Below are positions 1 through 46,500 of a DNA stretch of 64,000 bases, one piece after another (position 1 is the stretch's first letter; every line of letters begins with the position of its first letter). The position numbers and the translations under genes are program-made. The notes beneath the pieces were generated by a model. That model was not told the origin of the DNA and made no database searches. It worked only from the letters and a program-made list of their open reading frames with translations. The stretch comes from Salpingoeca rosetta (Eukaryota; Protista; Choanoflagellata): the NCBI GenBank assembly GCA_033442325.1, contig JAWQFM010000001.1:3011968-3075967 (forward strand), written 5' to 3'.

Positions 1-5
1 GCAAC

Positions 6-153
6 CTGCACATCCTTTGCGCCGTGCGGCAGCAGCACAACGCTGTGATACGACGAGGGTCGGTGAGCAAGAGCAGTGAGGCTGGAAGCACCATCATCAC
101 ACCAACAAGACACAAGGTATGCGAACAACACTCGATCGCCCGATCGCCTTGCA

Positions 154-187
<34 letters not shown>

Positions 188-432
188 ACAGACACACAGA
201 CACACAGACACACAGACACACAGACACACATACACAGACACACACAGACACACAGACACACAGACACACAGAGACACACATACACAGACACACACACATG
301 GACACACACAACCAACCTTGGCTTCTTGTTTGCGTGATCGGCATTCCACGGCTCGCGGAACTTGTCATAGTCGGGGTGGGATGGGAGCAGGAACTCCCCA
401 CGGAACCCCTCGGGCTTGGTGAGCTCGGCCAT
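6..432 (-). CDS. FAD-linked oxidoreductase (FAD_binding_4 / berberine-bridge-enzyme-like), first two exons (432-317, 42-6); gene continues beyond the window start
   Basis: Spliced product [38 protein letters not shown]|[13 protein letters not shown] fits the family N-terminus (G...P....Y...R..WN......P.vvv.P....DV). Junctions are GT-AG and in frame. Confidence 0.75.
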
Positions 433-2886: not shown

Positions 2887-3600
2887 CACACACACACACA
2901 GATACAGACAGACACACACAAAGACACAGACACGTGCGCGCACCTTGGCCAGCACTGTTGGCGACATGGTGAGACCCGTGACCTTGTCGTGCTTCTTCAT
3001 GATCTTGTAAAAGGCTGTGTTGTTGAGGTTACGGTATGCACGCAGCATGTCCAGGTTGCGGTAGTACTCCTGGAACGCCTTCTCCAACTGCTTCGTTTGG
3101 CTGTTCAGGATGCGTGACGGGTGTCGAAACCATCGCGTGAGTGCCTCTCGCCAGGACCCGTGCTCTTCCTGTAACACAGCAGCACGGGCACGTCGTCTTG
3201 CGTTTTTGCTGCGGATGGCTGCCACTGCGTGCTCGCCACCCGTCTGGTGTGCGACATACAGGGCGGCCAGTTGTGCCTCCAGGTCGTCACACGTCTTGCG
3301 GGCCTTGTCATCCTGCTCGAGGAAGAACTTGTTGACTTTGTCGAGCTCAGCGTCGACAGCTTGCAGGAATGCCTTCTCCTCATTGCTGTTGCTGATGGCC
3401 TCCAGCCGCTCCTCCTCCACCTCTTCCTCCGTCTTGAAGTCTGGTGAGACGTTTGTGGTCACCATGGGATGGAGGTCTGGGATGACACGCGGGAACTTGG
3501 TGCGGATTGCCTTGAGCAGCTTCTTGAGTCGTTTGTAGTTGACGTACGCGGGTCGCCATTCCGGGATAGCGTTGTTGAAGAGCTCATCACCAAACTTCAT
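763..3600 (-). CDS. XPR1: SPX-EXS phosphate exporter (XPR1/SYG1/PHO1 family), paralog A; exons 3600-2944 and 2685-763, ~859 aa
   Basis: SPX motifs MKFG...PEW...Y.YKRLKK and [18 protein letters not shown] motifs [52 protein letters not shown]. Phase-0 intron AAG|gt...ag|GTG. Confidence 0.95.
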
Positions 3601-31301: not shown

Positions 31302-34300
31302 TCACACTTGCATGCATTGACCCTTTTCATCTTCCGTCGCTTGTGCTTGTACCCATAGGCGTGCAACCAGTGTACCAACTCTGGCAAGGCGTGCTACCGC
31401 GCTGCCAAGAAGGACCGCGAGAAAGGTGGGGCCATCTGGGAAGCGTGTCTTACCCCCCCCCCTCTTTTTAAGCATGCGCCTGCCTGCACAGCTCACTCAT
31501 ACTTGCGTCTTCTCTAACTCGTGCATACCCCCAACACACAAACAATACACACACACACTCACACAAACAAACAATACACACACACATACATACACACATA
31601 CACACTCACACAAACAAACAATACACACACGTGTGAAGGCGCGCCTTGCGGGTGCGGTGATGGCGACCCCGGCTGCCTCAAGTGCGGCATGTGCAAGACG
31701 TGCGCCAAGGAGGGCAAGCGGGAGGATGGCGCCGACTCTGAGCAAAAGTCCCTCACTGCCGTTCTCGACCCGCCCCACGCCCCGCGCGTCCTGCCAGAGG
31801 GCTTTGAGCTCTCCCGCGTGCAGCAGGAGGAGGAGTTCGCGGACGTGTGTGCTGGCGAGGAGCACGTGGTTGCCCTGACCGTGGACGGCAAGGTGTTTGT
31901 GTCCGGCTCAAACGAGGACGGGCAGCTCGGCCTGCCAGACATGGTGTGCACCGTCCCCTTCACGCACGTGCCCTTGCCCAGCGAAGCGCGCGCGTGCGGC
32001 ATCGCAGCCGGCGCCCGCCACACGGCCGTTGTGCTTGAGGACGGGCGGCTGGTCACGTTTGGCCGCAGCGACGAGGGCCAGCTCGGTGCGGGCCGCGCTG
32101 TGACGGACGACGACCGGAAGGCGGCGGTTGAGGCTGCTGTTGACGCAGCAGCGAAGGAGAAGGCCGACGCACAGGAGGAAGAGAAGAACAAGGAGGAAGG
32201 AGAGGGAGAGGATGACGAGATGAAGAAGCCAGCAGCCGATGAGGCGAAGAAGGGGGAGGACAGCAAGGAGAAAGACAAGAAGGAAGCAGAGCAAGGTGAC
32301 GAGAAGAAGGCCGAAGGAGCTGAGCAGAAGGAGGGAGATCAAGAAGAAGACAAGAAGAAGAAAGACGACAAGGAGGAGGAGGAGGACAAGGATAAGGCTG
32401 CTGCTGCTGCCGCCGCCGCCGTCGCCGAAGACAAGGCTGTGGCTGAGCGGGCCAGCAAAGCTGCCAAGGCTGCCACCAACGCGCCGCGCATTGTGGAGCT
32501 GCCCATGGCCGCGTCCACCGTGAGCGCCGCCGGCAGCGCCACCATCGTGTTTATGGGAGAGGACGTCTTTGACAAGTCTGTCCTTGCCAAGTCCAGCATG
32601 GCCTGCACAGGCCAGTACCTGCTTGCGCTCACGCCGCAGGGGGGTGCTGCCGATGCTGCCACCGACGGTACGGTGTGCCTGGCCACCTTCAACCTGACCA
32701 GCGGCCTGCTTGTTGAGAAGAACACGGCGTCCGGGATTGGCCGCGGCAGCTGCCTGTGCTTCAGCGCGCAGCACGACACGCTTGCGCTCTACGACAACAC
32801 CGCCGCTGCCGTCAGCTTCCACCGCACGCTGCTGACGGACGTGGAACGCAAGCCACACGAACGGCAGCGGTCGTACTCGGACCTGGCGGTGGATCCCCGT
32901 GCATTCTTGCTGTCCCCGTCCAACGTCGTTGGCCCGGAGAGTGCGGCCACCGCGCCGCGCGCCCTCGCCTCCACGTTCCTCAGCGTTCTTGCTGCGATGA
33001 ACCACGAGCCCGTCGGGCGGCCCAAGGCGGCGTCAGACAAGGTGGTGCCCAGCTCGCCCTCCACCGGCATTGGGCTGGAGGACGTGACGCATGTGTCGCG
33101 GTACTCGTCGCAGGGCGGCGGCTGGGGCTACGGCGGGTCGTCGCCGGACGCCATCGGCTTCAAGGTGAACCAGCCGATCGCCATCTGCGGGTTTGGGCTG
33201 TATGGGCAGGACTCCATGTCGTTCAACGCCACGATGAAGCTGTTTGTGGACGGCAAGGCGGAAGAGCCTCTGGCGACCAAGACGACGACGTACTCGAGCA
33301 ACTGCCCCGGCCGCAACTACGCCGCCATCCTCTTTGACGAGCCCGTCACCGTGGAGCCGCACCAGCTGTACATTGCCTGGGCGCTGATCCAGAGCCCGCA
33401 CTCGTCCATCTGTGGCTCGAGCGGCCAGTCTGTGGTGGAGGAGGACGGGGTGCAGTTCAACTTTGTCAGCACGCACCACGGCTCCAACGGCACCGACGTC
33501 AGCTCCGGGCAGGTCCCTGCCATCCTCTTCTGCACGCTGGACAAGCTGCAGGGGAGCACGGACCTGTTTGCGTCCACGGAGCAGAGCTTCAAGCTGAGCC
33601 CCCGCTTCTACCGCCAGGCGGATGTTGGGGGCCTGGAGGGCCTGCTCAACACCCTCTCTTCCACGTGGCAGCACTTGCTCAAGGCCAAGGCGGTCCCAGC
33701 AGCAGGTAAAAGTACCAAGTCCAACACACACTTCCACGTGGGCGTGTTTGCCCGCTGCCTGCATCTGATTGAGCAGTGCGTGCGCAGCAACTTTGAACTA
33801 GACTGGCTCGGTAACGTGACCACGCGCCCAAAGCCGGACGTGTCCACTACTCTCTTTGAGGAAGTTCTGCGGCTGCGTCATTTCGCCCGCGAGTGCCTGT
33901 CCACAGCGCCCAAGAATGCGGCGACGCGCAAGGCACTGGAGCTCATCACCAGCACCTTCAAGCAGTTGTTTAAGCTCTTCTATCCTACCACTCGTCTCCA
34001 GCGTGACCTCTTCCTGGAGGTGCTGATGCATGGCAAGACCGATGTATCAGATCCGCAAGCAGAAGCGCAGGTGTGCGTGTGGAAACCTGTGTGTGTGTGT
34101 GTGTGCGTGTGTAAACCTGTGTGTGCGTGTGTGTGTGTATCTGTATCTGCGTGCGTGTGTATCTGTATCTGTGTGCGTGCGTGTGTACATCTTGAGTATG
34201 TCTGTGTGCATGTGCGTATCCCCCCCTCTCTCTGTGGTCAGTGTCTTTGGAGTTGTTTGGGTTTCTTCGTATGCGCGTGTGCCCTTGCTTGCTCTGGTGC

Positions 34301-34811
34301 TCGTTTCCTCGTTGCAGCCCACGCTTGTTGAGTGTGTGTGTGTGTTGCGCCCCCACACATGGTTTCCACATGTGTCACTCACTCGCCGTTACCACCCTGC
34401 GTTGCTCGAATTCCAGCCGCTGCTACTCGCGCTGTTGTCAGTGTTCTCACAGCCCGGTTTCAACTTCCCCAAGTTGTTTCTCGCCAAGAGCACGCTCGTG
34501 TCTGAAACCGCCAAGACCATGTACGTGTGTGTGTGTGTATGTGTGTTTTCCCATTCTTCTGCGTTATCTTCCTCCTGTGAATGCGTCCTTGCATCGTGTT
34601 GGTGACGTTACGGCGCCGCAGCGCCCAGCACGCCCTTTGATGCTATGCGCTGGCGATTCTTCCTGAACACATCGATTTGTGTTGCCTGGGGCTCATGTCT
34701 CTGTGTATGTGTGCGTGTATGTGCATGTGTGTATGTGTATGTGCATGTGCATGTGTATGTGCATGTGTATGTGCATGTGTATGTGTATGTGCATGTGTAT
34801 GTGTGCGTGTA

Positions 34812-37800: not shown

Positions 37801-40800
37801 ACCCTGTTTGCCTCATCGAAACGTTCCTTGTCCTCAATCTTTGTCGTCCATTACAGTCAAAGCCCTGATGCATTTCCATCCGCGTGAAGAAGGCAACTTC
37901 GACCAGATGTTCCTGCGCAACTTTGTCGACGCCACCCCCAACACACCAGGCGGCCGTCTCGGTGCGTCTTGTGTTGTGTCGTCTGCGTGCATGTTGTGTG
38001 CATGTCTTGGGTTGGGTGAACGTGTGCGTTTGCGTGCACACAGGTCTCTGCCACGGTGTCGGTGCATTTTGGCGCACGACGCACGCGACCACGAGCAAGC
38101 GAGGCGCAGTGTTCCCGTTTTGTCCCGAACGGCTGAATTATGTCCACATACACACGCTCATCCTCACCACCATGCTCATCCTCACAATCATGCACACGCT
38201 CACCACACTCGCGCACACATGCACATGATGATGCTGGCGCTGATGCAGCTGAGTGGTTGCAAGGGCCATGTGCAGTCAACCCTCGTTCGTGCACGCTCGA
38301 GTACATGCAGCCAGGCAAAGAAGTGACAACCATCAAGCAAGGCGACACGTGCAAATTCAAACGTGAGTAGACAAACTGCGCGCTGGCCTTCTTGACCTCC
38401 TGGTGCAAATATGTTACCTCTCTTCCCTCCACCTGCTTCCCACTTTCACGAGAGCGTTGTTGTCCTGTGTGTGGGTGTGTGTTGACACACAACTGCCATT
38501 CCTCGTATTGGTCACACACACACACACACCACACAAACACAAACACACACACAACTGACATTGCGCATGCGTTGCTTTCCTGTTTCTCTTCTTGTGTTGC
38601 TGGTTTTGTTTTGCTGTAGTGCAAACGCGCGCCACGGATGGAGGCTTGATCCACCACCCGAACACGATGGTGCGGTTCATTGCGAAGCGGCGGCGTGACA
38701 AGGCCACGTCTTCGTCCGAGCCGGCCAGCAAGGGCAAGGCCAATGGCAATGACGCTACCGCGGGTTCCTCTGCCAATGCTGATGCTGACAAGAGCAGCGC
38801 CCGCTCCCGCGATGTGCTGGCTGGTCTTGAGCCGCGCAAGACCGCGCATGGCATCGAGTACCAGTCGCTGTTTGCCCGCGGCGGCGTTCGCTACAGCCCG
38901 GAGGAGGCACGGCTGCGGTACCTGCAGAAGGCCGTGGAACAGGTGTCCACAGACGCCGTGGAGGACGGCGTGTATGCCATCTCGTGGAAGCCAACCGAGC
39001 CGGGTGTGTACGATGTGGACGTGGTGGTCGACGGCCAGTCGATCCTCGCCGAGAAGCGCGCGTATGTGGTTGAGGAGGACGACCACTTCAACAGCTCGGA
39101 CAAGGCGTCCACGGCCTCTGACGAGGAAGAGGAAGCCGCCCGCGCTGCCGTCGACAAGGAGCTGGAGGAGCTCGATGCAGAATGCGAAAACGACGTGGTC
39201 ATGACACCCGGCTCCAGCAAGTTCAAAGCCATCAAGGACGTCGTTGTCCGAGCAGCGCCTTCGCAAGAGAGCATCGGGGTGCGTACACGCGTACTCGTGT
39301 TTGTTTCAGCCCGTGGTGTTGCTGTCGTGGTGTCCGGTGTGCGTGTGCTCGGCTTTTGGGGTGTGCTCGGACACGATTGCTGTCGTGTGAATGAAGCCTC
39401 AGCGGTTCCCATGTTGTTCCAAAGCGAACGTAGTGTTTTAATGTTTGATTTGTGTTGGCTTCCGCTGTGCTTGGGCTGCTTTCTTGTCCTCTGTACCCTT
39501 TTGTTGTCGTTTGGTCGATTCACCCTGATTGTTGACATGTGTCATGTGTGGTTCCCCCGAAACAGGTCGGCAAGTTGTCTCCCGGCGATATCATTGACAC
39601 GAGCGACTTGCAGACAAACGCGGAAGGCATGTGGGTGAAGCTGGCAGGCGAATGCATCTTCTCATGCGTCGAAGAGGTATGGGAAAGGGGATTTCTACTT
39701 AACATGTGTGAGTGCAGGCGCGAGTGCACGTGTGAAGACGAATGATGCTGCGTCTAGCTTGATATATGTTTGCTGTGTGGGATTGGGCTACAGTTTGCTT
39801 GGGGTGGCGGTCGTACGTATTGTAGTCGCTGGCTTGTAATGCTGTCCCCGCTCTGTGTCGTTTTACCTCTTTGTTACACCACCATCAACTCTCACACGGA
39901 TTGAACTTGCGCTTGTAGTCGATGCGGCACCTCGATGCGTGGGTGCCCCATCACATTTCCGAGTTGTTTGGGGGCGCGCAAGTCCTCGAAGACCTGGCTG
40001 AAGACGCTGATGTGGACAGCAAGGGGAGCAAGCAATCGTCCGCAGAATCCCCCGCCGGCATGTCTGCACCGTACGTCACATGACCATTGCTACTGGCTTG
40101 CTGGTGTTGTTGTCTTTCATGACCGAAGGCGACTCCTCCCTACTCGCTGCTCATGAACGCGTGGTCTGATGTAGTGCTTTGTTCGACTTTCTCATTTTCA
40201 CATGGAACATGTTGTTTTGTGCCGCGTTCTCCATGCTCGAACCGTACACCCCTCTGCACGGCATGTACATCTGCAGTCGCGGGGGCTTTCAGCTGGGCCC
40301 GGGCCCCTTTGGCAGCTTTGGCAGCGGCCCGAGCGGCAGCGGCTCGCTCGGTGCGCCTGCTGGCATGAGTCCCTTTGGCTCCGCCTTTGGCAGTGGCCCT
40401 GCTGGTGGGTTTGGTGTGGGCCCGGTACTCAGTGCGCGACCTCCTGCGCCCGGTCCACGGCCGCCTGGTGCCATCGAAGGACTTACGTATCAAAAGAACG
40501 AGGTACCGACTTTTGGACAACCGGTACGTGCGTTTGGAGCGCCAGCGCCTGCGTTTGGAGCGCCAGCGCCTGCGTTTGGAGCGCCTGCGTTTGGAGCGCC
40601 TGCGTTTGGAGCGCCTGCGCCTGCGTTTGGAGCGCCTGCGCCTGCGTTTGGAGCACCAGGTCCGTTTGGGGCCAAGCCGTTTGATTTTGGCGGCACCAAG
40701 AAGGACTCGCCGTCATCGGCGGATCAAGCAGGTAGCGCGTTGGCCAAGACAGTGAAGAAGAAGGGGAAGAAGAAGCCTGCTGGGAAGAAGGCATTTGACA

Positions 40801-41515
40801 TGTTCCATGGCGAGGATGTGGTGGATCTTGTCACCCAAGAATCGAGCTCAGCGCCCGGTGAGGCCAAGCCGTTCTCGTTTGGAGAGGCGGCCAAGTTGAA
40901 GACGGGTTCTGACAGCTCCTCTTCATCCTCTGGTGCAAAGCCGGAGGCCGCGGCCAGCAAGCCAAAGGCCGACGAGCCTCCCCTGTTCTTGGAGCGGACG
41001 TGTCGCCAGGCATCGTACACGTTCCCTGTGGCCCGGCTGGTTCGCACCATCTATGCGGTGTTCTTGTGGCACGCCAACTTCATGCCGGATGCTGTCCTCT
41101 TGGCAACGCACCTCAAGTTCCAGCCAGACATGCTCCGCCCCCGCACCGAGGAGAAGCAGCGGCAAGGTGCAAGCGGTCGTCGTTGTGGTTGTGTGATGTG
41201 TGCGCATGCGTTTGTGGCATGCTGAGTGCATGCTTATGTCGGCGAGTGCGTGCATGTGTCGAACCCACTGTTTTCCAGCCAGTGCGCGCATTCCGTGTCA
41301 AATGCTCACTGTCTTGGTTTGTTTTCTTTGTCCCTTTCTGACACGACAGAGACGCAGCGCTTGCGCAAAGCCTTTTCTCACCCACCGCCTCCTGTCGAAA
41401 GCATCGGTGCGTACGCTTTCAAGAGAGAGAGTGTGTGTGTGAGTGTGTGTGTGTGAGGGTGAGGGTGAGTGAGAGTTAGAGAGCGAGAGAGTGTGTGCGT
41501 GTGTCCAAGGGGAAA

Positions 41516-41588
<73 letters not shown>

Positions 41589-43534
41589 CGAGGGGGGGGG
41601 GGGCGAAGTACCAGTGTTCATTGTGATCCATTGTGATATGGCATGGCTAACCGTTCACGTGCCCACTGCTGTTTCCAATGCACCGATGCTTGCGTCTCGT
41701 TGCTCTTGTCTTCATGACAGAGCACGGTGCCACGGTGTACTTCACCAACTCTGACTCGTCCATGCCCATCAAGGCGAAGGTACGAAGCGAACAGACTCGC
41801 ACAAACGAGCAATGACACAGCCAGCACAACTGCAAGCAGAAGGCGCCGCTTGTGCCGTGCAACCAATGTACCGCAGTTATGTTACACTATCGCAATGGCT
41901 GCCTCGCCGCATCTGATCCCAACTTTCTTCTTGTGTACGTGTGTGCAGGTGAAGAAGGTGCAGGTACAGCACATCATCATCAACGACCTCAAGGTTGAGG
42001 TTGGTATGCGGCTCGAGGCCAAGGACCGTCTCAACCCAAACATGATTGGTGAGGATGTTCTCGTTTGCATTGGATTTGCTCGTGCTCAAGCTTGCATTGG
42101 ATTTGCTCGTGACGCAAGCTTACTGGTGCTGTCCTGTCTCCCACGCGTGAACCTTGCCTTCGACGTAAACGACCGTGCGTCCTCTGCTTGCCTCAGCGCC
42201 TGCCAACGTCATTGCTGTGCTGCCGGACAACCGCATTCGGGTATGCGTATGCGTATGCGTGTGTGTGTGTGTGCGTGCGTGTGTGTGTGTGAACGTGGGC
42301 TTGTGTGTGTAATTGGGAGTGTGCTAGCTTGCTTGCTGGGTTGGGTTGCCTGCTCTTGCAACCAGGTATGGTCGACTGTCTTTGCTGATATGACCTTGCG
42401 CGCGTGCGATGGTTTGGTGTGCAGATCAACTTTGATGGGTGGAGTGCGCGGTACGACTACGAGGCTTCGCTGGACGACGCAGACTTGCATCCAATTGGAT
42501 ATGCACAAAGTATCAACCACAAGCTTGAGCGGCCCAACGGCTATGGAGAAAGGTGATTTGCTCTGTGCGTGTGCGCGTATGTGCATTGCGTTGTTGGCGT
42601 GTCGTAGCATGTGTTACATCTTGTTGTATCGTGTGGAGTGAGTGTGTTGTGGGACAACAAAAGCGACTCGAGTGTTCAGCGATGAAAATCAAGCAGCGGC
42701 GAGGAAACCCACTCAACTCAACGAGTGGCCTTCACGCTGTGCTCTTGATCTGCAATCACACGCAAACTCATTTGTTGTGTTACAGGTTTGTTTGGCCGGA
42801 GTATCTTCGCGACATCAAGGCGCGCCCAGTGCCGTTTGAGCTGCTCTCTCACCGCAGCAACCAGAAGCTCATCGAGCTGGACAAGAAGGTGTGCAGATGC
42901 CGCTTTGTGTGTGTGTGTGTGTGTGTGCGTGCGTGCGTGCGTGTGTGTGTGTGTGTGTGTGTAGCTTGAAGCATGTGACACTTGTTTATGTTGGTCAACG
43001 TGATTTCGACCATTCATTTTGGTTTTCTTTTGTGTACAGCACTCGCTTACCTCGCGTGCGCTTCCCATGCGTGCGATTCTTGTCCATGCACTCATGCAAC
43101 GCCACGAAACCCACCCGCACGCCACTATTCCACGCTACAGGCGAGGGAGATGGGCAATGGCGCCATCGCCCATCCCATCCACGAGCACTTACTCCGCCAC
43201 CACCTGCCGAACCACGGCTGGGTGTGCGATGGACGCCACCAGCAACACGATTTTTGCGGCTGCGATGGCGGCGGCGGCCTCTTTGGCGGCGTGGCATACG
43301 GCGGAACGGTTTGTTCTCCTTCCTTTGTTCGCACTCGCCTTGTCGTGATTTCTCAAGTGTTTGAGATGGTTGTTCAATTGAATTTTATCTTCTGTTGTAT
43401 TCCCTGCGTCCCACACATCCATGAACACACAAACACACACACAATCGCCAGCCAAGTATTCACTGATATCATGCTTCACGCACGCACATGAAATTACCAA
43501 CACCATCCTCATGCCCCCTCCGCTCACACAAACA

Positions 43535-43599
<65 letters not shown>

Positions 43600-46500
43600 C
43601 CGCGGTTCCGCTGCATGGACGGCTGCGACTATGACCTGTGCCTTGGCTGCGTTGCAACAAGCCGTCTGTTGTACGATCGCAAGAAGTACCCGCGCCGTGA
43701 AGACGCGGGTGGCGGCGGCCTGTTTGGCGGCCGTGACGGCCTGTTTGCGGATGATGACGACGACGACGATGAGCCGTCAACAAGCGAGGAGGAGGAGGAA
43801 GAGGACCTCTTTGGCGACGGCAGTGAGGGCGACGCTGCCGATCGCCCGACGCGGCAGGACGTGAAGGTCCTGCTTGAGGTCGAGGCCTCGGGTAAGGAGG
43901 TGGAGGTGCCTCTGTCCAACATCCGCTTTGTGGATGACGTGGAGCAGGAAGCAGAGGAGTCGCCGGCAGCACTCGCGGCAAGCCAGGTGCCGCTCGTGCC
44001 GCGGCTGCTGGCGTCCTCGTGGGACCAGAAGGAGGACCGCGCACTGTTTGTGCTCTCGTCCATCATGCGCCAGTTCAGCAAGGCCAGCGGGCTGACTATC
44101 GAGTCTGCGTTTTACGGCGAGCCCGCCGCCAACATTGGCAAGGACGTCACCACCACCGTGCAGTACTTTGTGAGCGAGGGCACGCTGCAGCTGCCCTGGA
44201 AGTACGACGTGCTGTTTGGGCCCACGCGCCTGCCCCAACCCAAGCTGCGGATTGTGTACAAGGTGCGCGGCGTGGATGGCGAGGAGCTCATCAACGAGAC
44301 AGACAAGGACGTGCCCGTGCGCCTGGACGCGGAGCAGATTGCCCGTGCCCGCGGCGTCGACTGGGACAAGGTCATGCGCAAGCTCACGGCTCCTGACGAC
44401 GACGAGGATGACAAGAAGAAGAAGAAGAACAAGGGCAAGCAGAAGGACAAGAAGGAGGAGAACGCTGGTCCTGTGCCTGTGCCGTTTGGCGGCTTTGGCG
44501 GCTTTGGAGGCGGCTTTGGCGCGCCCCAGCAGGACCAGGTGTGCGAGCTGTGCAAGGAGACCCACCCTTCGCCGATCACCTACCACATGCGAAAGCAGCA
44601 CCCGGGCTGCGGCAAGAACGCGTCCGGCATGGGCTACAACAGCGGCGGCTCGTATGACTCTGGCTGGGTTGGCAACTGCGGCGACGGCGGCATTGGCGGC
44701 AACACGTGGTACCTGCTGTGCCGCGAGTGCCGGGAGAAGTACATGCATGAGGAGAAGAGCGACGACGAGGAGGAAGAGGAGGGCGTGGATGCCCTGCTGG
44801 CGACGGCCCTGGCCACTGCGCTCCCCAGCATCGACGATGAGGGCGAGGCCGAGGCCGACCCTGACGCCACCACCGCCGTCGGCCTCCTCAAGCGCGTGGG
44901 CCTCAAGGCCGAGTTCCTGCTCAACCTGGAGCCGTTTGAGCACGAGGCGCGCTTCACCTCGGCGTCGGCGGCGGACGACGTGGACAGCGACGCCACGCTC
45001 GACCCGACCGCCGGCTCGCTGTACATGGAGCTGAAGCAGGAGCTCCTTGATCTGCAGCCGCCAGAGCCAGACGCGGACGTGCTTGGCCGCTCCATCTCCG
45101 CCGCACCCACGCGCGCGCGCCCAACGCTGCGCAAGCAGCAGACGCTCGGCGGCGAGGCCCTGCGCAAGCTCTCTGGTGACATCACGGCTGCCCTCAGCCC
45201 GCTGCGGCGCAACGTCACGGACGATCCAACGGCGCTCTCCAGCACCGCTGCTGGCTCGCTCAGCCCCCAGCGCGGCAAGCACACCCGCCGCGGCGTCTCC
45301 AGCACGAGCGGCGCCGACGACGCAGCAGGGACGGGTGCAGGCGCAGGTGCGGGCGCCCCGAGGCCACGGCGGCCGGGCCAGCTCAGCCGCGCGCTGAGCC
45401 TGCCGTACCCCGACGATGAGCAGGAGGCGCAGCACACGACGGTGCCCAACTCGCCCACGTCTGCACGCGGCCAGGCGCCGCGCGGCTTCACGGCCCCACA
45501 CGAGGCGCTGCTGGGCCGCCCGTCGAAGCAGCTGCGCAAGTTTGCCAAGAGCGACGGGCAGGCCGAGCTGACGAAGAACGTACTGGACTTTGTGTCGTCT
45601 TCGGCCAGCACGGAGCGGGTGGCGCGGCTGCTCAAGGCCGAGGCCGAGCACGTGTACCAGCGGCTGCAAGGGCTGCGGCTGTTCATTGTGCTGCTGAAGA
45701 GCGTGATGACGCCCGGCGCGGTGCAGGACCTGCTGTGGTACTTTGTGTCGACGCTGGCCAAGGGCAGGAAGCCCGAGGTGGACAGCGAGGGCGTGGACGT
45801 GCCGCTGCCGCTTGGCAAGCACCCGCTCGGCGACATTGACACCACCAACACGCTGGTGGGCTTTGTGCGCCACACATACCACCACCTGCTCTCTGTCGTG
45901 CTTGATTTCATGCGGGCGCTGCCTGCGTCATCGCCCGTGCAGCAAATTGCGCTGCGCTGCTGGGCGCTGCCGTTCCAGGAGGCGGACCTGCCGTTCCTGC
46001 ACCGCTCCCAGATCTTCTCCGTCGTCTCGGGCCACGTGTCGCTTGGCCCGCGCGCACGCGAGGCTGAAGGCGAGCAGGAGGTGGTGGAATGGCTGGAGCG
46101 CGCCCCGGTCAAGGCCGAGGTGAGCGTGGCCTCAAAGGAGGCCCTGAAGGACTCCCTCTCCGACAGCGACACGCAGACGTTCTGGGAGAGCGACGAGAGC
46201 CCCGAGGGTGGACAGCGCTGGATTCAGCTGGAGATTGCGCCGGGGGAGCGTGCTGAGCAGGTGGCCGTGTTCATTGACAACGGCCGTGACTCCAACCACC
46301 GCGTGTCCAAGGTGCGCGTGGAGACTGGGCCCTCGGCGGAGAAGCTCGTTGGCTTTGGCTCCTCCATCTCCGTCAGCTCCAAGTTTGTGGGCTGGCTGAC
46401 GCTGCCGTGCGCGCACAGCAGCAAAGGCGGTGGCGGCAGCAGCAGCGGTGGCGGCGGCGGCGACAAGAAGGCTGGAGGCGGCGGTAGCGTTGGTGATGAC

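What the first reader, a model, noticed from the sequence alone, without database searches (positions are those of the whole stretch)
41721..43930. MYCBP2 carries a circularly permuted MBT methyl-lysine reader and a zinc finger, apparently nested inside a split Tudor/SH3-like barrel
Seen: four small exons splice into an MBT core ([12 protein letters not shown]...INFDGW..RYDY...LHPIGY) with the cage residues D, N, F, W and Y intact. The arm motif FVWPEYL...A.PVP..LL comes after the core instead of before it. A ZZ/DC1-like finger follows ([27 protein letters not shown]). On either side lie GATVYF...IKAKVKKV and [23 protein letters not shown], which look like two halves of a Tudor/SH3-like barrel. 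Known: MBT domains read mono- and di-methyl-lysine; I do not know of one in animal MYCBP2. Inference: a single-chain reader-plus-ligase that could ubiquitinate methylated substrates.
Basis: partly seen in the sequence, partly recalled or inferred. Interest (0 to 1): 0.8.

Follow-up and report, generated by a model that had tools for sequence, protein, structure and literature searches.

The report
MBT reader module in choanoflagellate MYCBP2
The giant ubiquitin ligase MYCBP2 of the choanoflagellate Salpingoeca rosetta carries, in its spliced mRNA, a methyl-lysine-reader (MBT) domain plus a ZZ-type zinc finger inserted inside a small Tudor-like barrel; other choanoflagellates share this module, animal MYCBP2 is not known to have it, and it is visible in public gene models but I found no paper describing it.

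Summary
The window is Salpingoeca rosetta and the gene is PTSG_11546, a 4928-aa MYCBP2/PHR-family RING-Cys-relay ligase.

- **Transcript:** stranded RNA-seq joins all seven exons (41721-43600 onward) into one mRNA with the flanking MYCBP2 exons.
- **MBT:** the spliced protein has one full-length MBT repeat (Pfam E 4e-21). All five L3MBTL1 pocket residues are kept: D2969, N2972, F2994, W2997, Y3001.
- **Arm:** a canonical MBT arm follows the core.
- **Finger:** next comes a divergent ZZ-type finger with a DC1-like HxHxL start. It is below Pfam's threshold in S. rosetta, but every ortholog matches ZZ weakly.
- **Barrel:** two flanking strand pairs form, in an AlphaFold model, a complete Tudor-like barrel. 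Whole Tudor domains align to them at 1.4-2.3 Å.
- **Not a permutation:** core plus trailing arm aligns collinearly with core(n) plus arm(n+1) of L3MBTL1. That pair is the natural packing unit.
- **Conservation:** Monosiga brevicollis and two metagenomic contigs carry the whole module, and a fourth relative carries part of it. A metagenomic relative (P0003) and the animal PHR domain lists lack it.
- **Novelty:** public gene models already show the MBT hit, but I found no paper on it.
- **Function:** methyl-lysine-guided (and perhaps N-terminus-guided) recruitment to the ligase is inferred, not shown.

The parts
41721..41779 (+). Exon A: first half of the outer Tudor-like barrel (strands TVYF and IKAK...; P0014 residues about 2925-2943)
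   Evidence: AG/GT sites. RNA-seq joints 41406>41721 and 41779>41949. AF2 strands 14-17 and 26-34 with pLDDT 82-84. Tudor alignments spanning model 2..323.
41949..42048 (+). Exon B: end of barrel strand 2 (VKKVQ), then the start of the MBT core ([12 protein letters not shown]). Pocket residues D2969 (42024-42026) and N2972 (42033-42035).
   Evidence: RNA-seq joints. Pfam MBT 2963-3031. Alignment to L3MBTL1.
42197..42240 (+). Exon C: 44-nt exon encoding the middle strands of the MBT core ([14 protein letters not shown])
   Evidence: Joint 42048>42197, and a loose end before 42424 that reads the end of exon C. Contig X11 record 2 has exactly 44 letters between exons B and D.
42425..42552 (+). 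Exon D: MBT core second half ([12 protein letters not shown]...LHPIGY...ERPNGYGE). Pocket residues F2994 (42431-42433), W2997 (42440-42442), Y3001 (42452-42454).
   Evidence: Pfam MBT E 4e-11 on this exon alone. Joints.
42786..42888 (+). Exon E: MBT arm following the core ([20 protein letters not shown]...) and a helix
   Evidence: Aligns to the arms of L3MBTL1 repeats 2 and 3, collinear with the preceding core. Conserved in the M. brevicollis genome and in L003/L004. AF2 confidence is low here.
43141..43308 (+). Exon F: first half of the ZZ-type finger, with a DC1-like start (HPIHEHLL...WVCDG...C)
   Evidence: Invariant H, H, H, W, C, D, G, C in five sequences. Pfam ZZ matched by 5 of 5 and C1_2 by 4 of 5 members.
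43600..43650 (+). Start of exon G: second half of the finger ([17 protein letters not shown])
   Evidence: Pfam ZZ profile 19-37, sub-threshold. Profile search of PDB returns ZZ domains of PRT1, HERC2, p300, KCMF1 and p62 first. The relative L001 has the same intron position.
43651..43857 (+). Acidic, Gly-rich linker, predicted disordered; much shorter in M. brevicollis, L003 and L004
   Evidence: pLDDT below 50. Alignments A1/A7.
43858..43932 (+). Second half of the outer Tudor-like barrel ([25 protein letters not shown])
   Evidence: Conserved in P0001/L001, P0004, P0005, P0007 and P0009. AF2 strands 299-304 and 310-314 at pLDDT 87/79 after a disordered linker. Tudor alignments end at model 320-324.

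Best explanation
**Shown.** The S. rosetta MYCBP2 ortholog (PTSG_11546) has RCC1-like, PHR and DOC domains and a C-terminal RING plus tandem-cysteine unit. Between the conserved 'FLWHxxxxxDAxxxATHLKF' helix and the conserved CELC...HPGCG finger it contains a roughly 320-residue insert. The insert is built as follows:
- two strands of a Tudor-like barrel;
- one MBT core;
- the MBT arm;
- a ZZ-type two-zinc finger;
- a disordered acidic linker;
- the last strands of the same Tudor-like barrel.

Topologically it resembles the interdigitated (hybrid) double Tudor domains of JMJD2A and ARID4A/B, except that the inner unit here is an MBT plus a ZZ finger.

**Inferred.**
- The MBT pocket (D2969, N2972, F2994, W2997, Y3001) binds mono- or di-methyl-lysine, as in L3MBTL1.
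- The ZZ finger keeps the acidic residues that p62 ZZ uses to hold a free N-terminus, so it may bind an N-terminal residue.
- The outer barrel holds the two readers together on the ligase body.
- The module would then recruit methylated (and possibly N-terminally defined) proteins, either as substrates or as partners, to the RING-Cys-relay catalytic end. That would be a one-chain version of the L3MBTL3-CRL4(DCAF5) methyl-degron pathway.
For: - **Transcript and gene identity:**
- **MYCBP2 family:** Pfam RCC1, PHR, ANAPC10 and RING. The C-terminal 256 aa match the solved MYCBP2 RCR structure 5O6C at E 2e-106.
- **MBT:** Pfam E 4e-21. PDB phmmer E 9e-48 to L3MBTL1 with the pocket residues aligned. 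The AF2 core superposes on solved MBTs at Z 11.0 and 1.6 Å over 74 aa.
- **Pocket conservation:** the pocket motifs EAKDRxNP and FDGWxxRYD[YF] are identical in M. brevicollis, L003 and L004, although overall module identity is only 33-47%.
- **Arm:** it packs on the preceding core in known structures (PMC2747274).
- **Finger:** the PDB profile search returns only ZZ domains at the top. Twenty columns are invariant, including 6 Cys, 3 His and the CDG and DYD acidic residues. The role of the p62 residues is in PMC6197226.
- **Split barrel:**. Precedent for the topology is in PMC8038949.
- **MBT-directed proteolysis in trans:** the abstract of PMC10889763 says methylated lysines in non-histone proteins give a signal for ubiquitin-dependent proteolysis. 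That L3MBTL3 and CRL4(DCAF5) are the players is my own knowledge, not read in that paper.
Against: - No binding or activity data exist.
- The AF2 models are only moderately confident (mean pLDDT 56.6 and 62.3, from an alignment of a few species). The arm and part of the finger are below pLDDT 60, so arm-on-core packing is not shown for this protein.
- I could not inspect the model's contacts. The barrel is inferred from alignment ranges, and Z of about 8 is in the range the tool calls middling.
- The finger fails Pfam's ZZ threshold (17.5 bits against 21.4). It lacks the first CxxC: the sequence is CDGR, and the next Cys lies about 10 residues on.
- The outer barrel has no conserved aromatic cage.
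- MBT pockets can be kept in repeats that bind other ligands or nothing.
Confidence: 0.55

Rival explanations
1. The module is a chromatin or histone-tail reader that places the ligase at chromatin or the nuclear envelope, rather than choosing substrates by a methyl-degron. The MBT would read H4K20me1/2 or H3 Kme1/2, and the ZZ finger would read the H3 N-terminus.
For: The closest MBT relatives are the histone readers L3MBTL1/3, SFMBT and SCML2. HERC2 and p300 ZZ structures fused to histone H3 are among the best finger matches. A nucleoporin-like FG tract lies just upstream in the same protein (note s1-432732).
Against: No localisation data exist. Animal MYCBP2 is described as a cytoplasmic and axonal signalling hub (PMC4806438). 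Nothing in the sequence separates this reading from substrate recruitment.
Confidence: 0.22
2. The module is a structural or autoregulatory insert. The pocket and finger bind parts of the ligase itself or a fixed partner, independently of methylation, or bind nothing. The residues would be conserved because of the fold.
For: Many MBT repeats in multi-repeat proteins keep a barrel but do not bind methyl-lysine; in MBTD1 only one of four repeats does (PMC2747274). The finger is a divergent ZZ. Giant protist proteins often accumulate domains.
Against: All five pocket residues, including the non-structural D and N, are identical in four species whose modules are otherwise only 33-47% identical.
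Confidence: 0.2
3. Artefact: the MBT/ZZ exons belong to another gene nested in a MYCBP2 intron, or come from a gene-model fusion.
For: None found.
Against: Every junction links these exons in frame to the upstream and downstream MYCBP2 exons in stranded RNA-seq and in single transcript contigs. No skipping isoform was seen. The same order is found in three other genomes.
Confidence: 0.02

Closest known systems
MBT repeats of L3MBTL1/L3MBTL3 (also SFMBT, SCML2, MBTD1)
   Same: Same fold and sequence family (Pfam PF02820, E 4e-21). The pocket residues D/N/F/W/Y are identical. The arm motif F.W..YL....P.P..L follows the core exactly as the next repeat's arm does in L3MBTL1.
   Different: There is a single repeat instead of 2-4. 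It has no N-terminal arm of its own, and its only arm is C-terminal. It sits inside another barrel and inside an E3 ligase, not in a Polycomb-type chromatin protein.
Interdigitated (hybrid) double Tudor domains of JMJD2A-C and ARID4A/B
   Same: The topology is the same: two N-terminal and two C-terminal strands form one barrel, and the sequence between them forms a second royal-family barrel (PMC8038949). 2mam is among the structural matches.
   Different: The inner unit here is an MBT core plus arm plus ZZ finger plus a long disordered linker (about 260 residues), not a 50-residue Tudor. No sequence similarity was detected. The outer barrel lacks an aromatic cage.
ZZ domains that read protein N-termini (p62/SQSTM1, PRT1, KCMF1, HERC2, p300)
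   Same: The second half, R[YF]RC..GCDYDLC..C, and the CDG motif are shared. The acidic residues equivalent to p62 D129, D147 and D149 are invariant. Several of these proteins are also E3 ligases or degradation adaptors.
   Different: The finger is below Pfam's gathering score in S. rosetta. The first CxxC is replaced by C-x10/11-C. An N-terminal HPxHxHxL, typical of DC1/C1_2 fingers, is added, and there is no C-terminal HxxxH pair. Ligand binding is untested.
L3MBTL3-CRL4(DCAF5) methyl-lysine-dependent proteolysis
   Same: The logic is the same: an MBT reader brings methylated proteins to a ubiquitin ligase. The abstract of PMC10889763 covers methyl-lysine as a proteolytic signal read by MBT proteins. 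That the ligase is CRL4(DCAF5) is from my own knowledge.
   Different: From my own knowledge, the animal enzyme esterifies Thr/Ser.
Animal PHR proteins (MYCBP2/Phr1, Highwire, RPM-1)
   Same: They share the RCC1-like, PHR, DOC and RING-TC (RCR) domains. The C-terminal 256 aa match 5O6C at E 2e-106.
   Different: The review of animal PHR proteins lists RLD, PHR, RBD, FBD1, MBD and RING, with no MBT, ZZ or Tudor. A MYCBP2 fragment from an unidentified metagenomic eukaryote (P0003) goes from the conserved helix to the CELC finger with only low-complexity sequence between them.

Membership tests
MBT repeat (Pfam PF02820 / SMART MBT) | Profile match above the curated threshold over the whole core | tested here: met
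   75.4 bits against a cut-off of 22, E 4e-21, profile 1-68 of 69. M. brevicollis ortholog E 6e-21.
MBT repeat (Pfam PF02820 / SMART MBT) | Semi-aromatic methyl-lysine pocket (L3MBTL1 D355, N358, F379, W382, Y386) | tested here: met
   The alignment to L3MBTL1 repeat 2 places D2969, N2972, F2994, W2997 and Y3001 on these residues. The numbering comes from the PDB mutant titles and from residue spacing. The residues are identical in M. brevicollis, L003 and L004.
MBT repeat (Pfam PF02820 / SMART MBT) | Extended arm that packs on a core | tested here: inconclusive
   The arm sequence is present and collinear with the next-repeat arm of L3MBTL1. AF2 gives it pLDDT 35-61, so the packing is not shown.
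MBT repeat (Pfam PF02820 / SMART MBT) | Binding of mono-/di-methyl-lysine | not testable with these tools
   Needs peptide binding assays.
ZZ-type zinc finger (Pfam PF00569) | Profile match above the curated threshold | tested here: not met
   S. rosetta scores 15.2-17.5 bits against a cut-off of 21.4, and only profile positions 19-37 match. All 5 related fingers match ZZ weakly (best E 1e-5) and 4 of 5 also match C1_2.
ZZ-type zinc finger (Pfam PF00569) | Eight Cys/His ligands for two zinc ions in a cross-brace pattern | tested here: inconclusive
   Six invariant Cys and three invariant His are available, but the first CxxC pair is not kept and the C-terminal His pair is absent. Ligand assignment needs a structure.
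ZZ-type zinc finger (Pfam PF00569) | Closest solved relatives are ZZ domains | tested here: met
   Nearly all of the 28 listed PDB matches, and all of the best ones, are ZZ domains of PRT1, HERC2, p300, KCMF1 and p62. The matches are weak (E 0.003 to 5).
Tudor / SH3-like barrel (royal family fold) | Five-stranded barrel superposable on solved Tudor domains | tested here: met
   In the AF2 model, PHF19 aligns 55 of 57 aa at 2.0 Å (Z 8.1), TDRD3 60 of 60 aa at 2.2 Å (Z 8.0), MTF2 51 aa at 1.4 Å (Z 7.9), and SMN 56 of 56 aa at 2.1 Å (Z 7.2). All span model range about 2..323, i.e. both halves. This is model-based and Z is middling.
Tudor / SH3-like barrel (royal family fold) | Sequence-profile membership or an aromatic cage | tested here: not met
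   No Pfam Tudor-type hit on the module. No aromatic position is conserved across the orthologs in the two halves. I therefore file it as a fold-level resemblance only.
MYCBP2 / PHR RING-Cys-relay ligases | RCC1-like, PHR, DOC and RING plus tandem-cysteine domains | tested here: met
   Pfam hits. The C-terminus matches 5O6C over 256 aa at E 2e-106.

The most novel reading that the evidence does not exclude
The Tudor-nested MBT+ZZ unit is a composite degron reader. It would need both a mono-/di-methyl-lysine and a defined free N-terminus on the same target, and would feed that target to a RING-Cys-relay ligase. That would be the first E3 with a built-in methyl-degron reader, present in the closest unicellular relatives of animals and either lost or never gained on the animal stem.
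Probability: 0.2. Interest if true: 0.75.

Novelty: new variant of a known kind. Interest (0 to 1): 0.5.

Why it matters
MYCBP2/PHR ligases are studied almost only in animal neurons, and how they pick substrates beyond FBXO45-bound ones is still open. A choanoflagellate ortholog with two ligand-reader domains built in, and conserved, gives a concrete and testable handle on substrate choice. Testing is feasible because S. rosetta is genetically tractable. It would also be a cis-fused example of methyl-lysine-directed ubiquitination, known so far only in trans. Structurally it extends the interdigitated double Tudor topology to an MBT-plus-zinc-finger insert. It also shows that a lone MBT core with a trailing arm can exist outside tandem arrays. 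The limit on its importance is that it is a lineage-specific domain accretion, already visible in automatic annotation, with no functional data.

Tried and rejected
1. The word-based homolog search with the 331-aa module returned nothing. Low-complexity words (poly-D/E/G) probably filled the candidate list, so this says nothing about relatives.
2. The same search with the 1707-aa exon found only three proteins, because full-length orthologs exceed the length window. The full-length proteins came from the representatives search and from a region search with the M. brevicollis protein.
3. The first AF2 run on a 7-row alignment was poor (pLDDT 56.6). Its Foldseek matches had rmsd of 6-19 Å, so I used them only to say the matches are MBT proteins.
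4. Alignments A4-A6 misplaced short exon fragments, and I discarded them in favour of A7.
5. The metagenome scan with the finger/barrel profile gave only two loci with the finger alone. One (L005) is an unrelated protein and is not an ortholog.
6. The ESM Atlas feature search returned only animal MBT proteins at low scores.
7. I did not type the spliced protein, or joined barrel halves, into any tool. Once P0014 was found to be the same protein it served as the reference. A Pfam test of the two barrel halves joined artificially was therefore left out.
8. 'Circular permutation' is rejected as the explanation of the arm order.
9. A separate nested gene is rejected.
Full report
**What the locus is.** The window has GC-rich exons and introns rich in (TG)n/(CA)n. 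On the + strand a long multi-exon gene encodes RCC1 repeats and a PHR domain (ORF 31521-34328) and a DOC/ANAPC10 domain and a RING (ORF 43615-48735). That combination is the signature of MYCBP2/PHR ligases. A region search with the Monosiga protein returned Salpingoeca rosetta PTSG_11546 (P0014, 4928 aa, named by UniRef 'RCR-type E3 ubiquitin transferase'). My spliced translation of 40591-48735 is 99.85% identical to it over 2050 aa. So the window is S. rosetta and the public gene model already contains these exons. The last 256 residues match the solved MYCBP2 RING-Cys-relay structure 5O6C at E 2e-106.

**Exons and transcript.** Reading the sequence gives these exons:
- A 41721-41779
- B 41949-42048
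- C 42197-42240
- D 42425-42552
- E 42786-42888
- F 43141-43308
- G from 43600

All have AG/GT borders. A further 57-nt exon lies at 41350-41406.

I laid two stranded RNA-seq runs and two sets of transcript contigs on 40100-46000. Every junction is seen with 16-97 reads per run, on the strand expected for a + strand mRNA. The two junctions next to microsatellites (C>D, F>G) show up as loose ends whose consensus is the neighbouring exon. One contig also runs from 40591 to 44713 with all introns removed. No exon-skipping form appeared.

**The MBT.**
- Exon D alone matches Pfam MBT at E 4e-11. The spliced module (P0014:2915-3245) matches at E 4e-21 over profile positions 1-68 of 69.
- Against solved structures the best matches are L3MBTL1 and L3MBTL3 (E about 1e-47, summed over their three repeats).
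- In the alignment to L3MBTL1 repeat 2, the query residues D2969, N2972, F2994, W2997 and Y3001 fall on the D, N, F, W and Y of the methyl-lysine pocket. D355 and N358 are the residues mutated in PDB entries 2rhz, 2ri2, 2ri3 and 2ri5, and the spacing fixes F379, W382 and Y386.
- The AF2 model's core superposes on solved MBT domains at Z 11.0 and 1.6 Å over 74 residues.

**The arm and the 'circular permutation'.** The arm motif does follow the core. However, HMMER aligns query 37-144 without rearrangement to L3MBTL1 repeat 1 core plus repeat 2 arm, and query 44-137 to repeat 2 core plus repeat 3 arm. The MBTD1 structure paper states that each arm packs against the core of the preceding repeat (PMC2747274). 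So a core followed by an arm is the natural structural unit of an MBT array. The S. rosetta arrangement is what one gets by taking one core with the next arm, and no permutation event is needed. The protein has no arm motif before the core. AF2 gives the arm low confidence (pLDDT 35-61), so its packing in this protein is not shown.

**The zinc finger.**
- The finger is split by the F/G intron. A relative (contig L001, 49% identical protein P0001) has an intron at the same point, just before RFRC.
- Five fingers were aligned: S. rosetta, M. brevicollis, two metagenomic orthologs, and one unrelated protist protein (L005). Twenty columns are invariant: H, P, H, H, L, W, C-D-G, C, R, R-C, C-D-Y-D-L-C and C.
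- Pfam ZZ is matched by all five (best E 1e-5) and C1_2 (DC1) by four. S. rosetta's own finger stays under the ZZ threshold.
- A profile of the five returns almost only ZZ domains from the PDB, and only ZZ domains among the best matches: PRT1, HERC2, p300, KCMF1 and p62. The E-values are weak, 0.003 to about 5.
- The CDG and DYD aspartates correspond by motif to p62 D129, D147 and D149, which hold the free N-terminus of Arg-degrons (PMC6197226). That correspondence is an inference from motif identity, not a tested property.

**The split barrel.** The segment before the MBT (GATVYF...IKAKVKKVQ) and the segment after the acidic linker ([23 protein letters not shown]) are conserved as strand-like patterns in every ortholog. 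In both AF2 runs they are predicted as strands. In the better run (14-row alignment A7, mean pLDDT 62.3) they are the most confident parts of the model, at 82-84 and 87/79, although about 60 disordered residues precede the second one.

A Foldseek-independent structural search found two classes of matches besides the MBT-to-MBT ones. Some Tudor and chromo domains align to the MBT core itself (model 38-110). Many whole single Tudor, chromo, PWWP, KOW and CPH domains instead align with a model range of about 2 to 323 and only 51-66 aligned residues. Examples are PHF19 (55 of 57 residues at 2.0 Å, Z 8.1), TDRD3 (60 of 60 at 2.2 Å), MTF2 (51 at 1.4 Å) and SMN (56 of 56 at 2.1 Å). Alignments of that length and range must be built from the two flanking segments, so in the model they form one complete barrel.

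The caveats are these:
- I cannot inspect the model's contacts.
- The alignment behind the model is shallow.
- Z near 8 is what the tool calls middling.
- No Tudor sequence profile matches.
- No aromatic cage is conserved.

I put the split barrel at about 70%. The topology has a precedent. [quoted passage not shown]

**Distribution.** A HMMER scan of 1.84 billion representative proteins, using the finger's second half, the barrel's second half and the following beta-rich domain as query, found 11 proteins. Those that cover the barrel or finger part are:
- P0001, the relative from a Logan assembly;
- M. brevicollis XP_001748055 (P0007, 4422 aa), which has Pfam MBT at E 6e-21 in the same place;
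- three metagenomic fragments.

The contigs of two of those fragments (L003 from JGI, L004 from ENA) carry the whole module in the same order, with introns. The M. brevicollis gene model skips 19 residues of the arm, but the genome encodes them in frame (RFKWPAYLKENKFQHVPYS, L002:12530-12634).

A MYCBP2 fragment from an unidentified eukaryote in a metagenome (P0003) passes from the conserved helix to the CELC...HPGCG finger with only low-complexity sequence between. The review of animal PHR proteins lists RLD, PHR, RBD, FBD1, MBD and RING and never mentions MBT.

Within what these tools can see, the module is standard in choanoflagellate-type MYCBP2 and not found elsewhere.

**Literature.** No paper in the library holds both 'choanoflagellate' and 'MYCBP2'. 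The only listed paper (of two) with 'MYCBP2' and 'MBT domain' is unrelated. A study that looked for MBT domains outside animals reports MBT-SAM proteins in Capsaspora and Parvularia, and its main text does not mention this protein. The MBT hit is nevertheless attached to both public gene models in the precomputed Pfam data. The fact is therefore public, but as far as I can tell undescribed.

**Mechanism.** These points are shown: the anatomy, the expression, the conservation, and an intact catalytic end at the sequence level.

These points are inferred:
- The MBT binds Kme1/2.
- The finger may bind an N-terminus.
- The outer barrel fixes both readers to the ligase.
- The module recruits methylated proteins as substrates or partners.

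The closest functional analogy is methyl-lysine-dependent proteolysis through MBT readers. [quoted passage not shown] That this runs through L3MBTL3 and CRL4(DCAF5) is from my own knowledge. The rivals are a chromatin-localising role and a structural or autoregulatory role. The identity of the non-structural pocket residues D and N, across species whose modules are only 33-47% identical, speaks for a working pocket.

**Verdict.** This is a real, expressed and conserved nested reader module. 'Circularly permuted' should be dropped. The ZZ and split-Tudor readings hold with moderate confidence. Novelty is moderate: a new domain architecture of known parts, already in automatic annotation. The function is untested.

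Noticed in passing
window 43990-44400 (P0014 about 3255-3390): Directly after the module lies a beta-rich domain of about 130 residues (ESAFYG...LFGP...LRIVYKV), weakly like Pfam DnaJ-like_C11_C (E 0.037). It is conserved in all choanoflagellate-type orthologs. It also occurs as up to 8 repeats in unrelated proteins (P0006, P0008, P0010-P0013).
   Followed up: partly
L002:12530-12634 (M. brevicollis CH991561.1): The public M. brevicollis gene model XP_001748055 omits 19 in-frame residues of the MBT arm (RFKWPAYLKENKFQHVPYS) that the genome encodes. The cause is probably a misplaced splice acceptor.
   Followed up: yes
window 43196: RNA-seq runs X21, X22 and X11 all read A instead of G here, changing Arg to His in the finger's first half (LLRHH to LLHHH). 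About 30 other fixed differences from the window are mostly silent. These look like strain differences, since run X4 agrees with the window.
   Followed up: partly
window 44413-44443: Many reads have loose ends on both sides of the AAG/GAG-rich stretch that encodes [14 protein letters not shown], and opposite-strand depth appears only here. This is probably cross-mapping from another low-complexity transcript rather than an isoform.
   Followed up: no
L005:2819-6088 (JGI Ga0307982_1004936): An unrelated 1089-aa protist ORF carries the same unusual finger ([27 protein letters not shown]). So this ZZ/DC1-hybrid finger is a small family of its own and is not confined to MYCBP2.
   Followed up: partly
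window 43520-43599 and 42231-42303: The acceptor of exon G follows an uninterrupted (CA)n run with no pyrimidine tract. The donor of exon C is followed by a (TG)n-rich run. Both sites are used in the RNA-seq data.
   Followed up: partly
window 40275-41166: An FG/GLFG-like repeat tract lies in the exon upstream of the module, in the same mRNA (contig X11 record 2). The relative P0003 has a similar tract.
   Followed up: no
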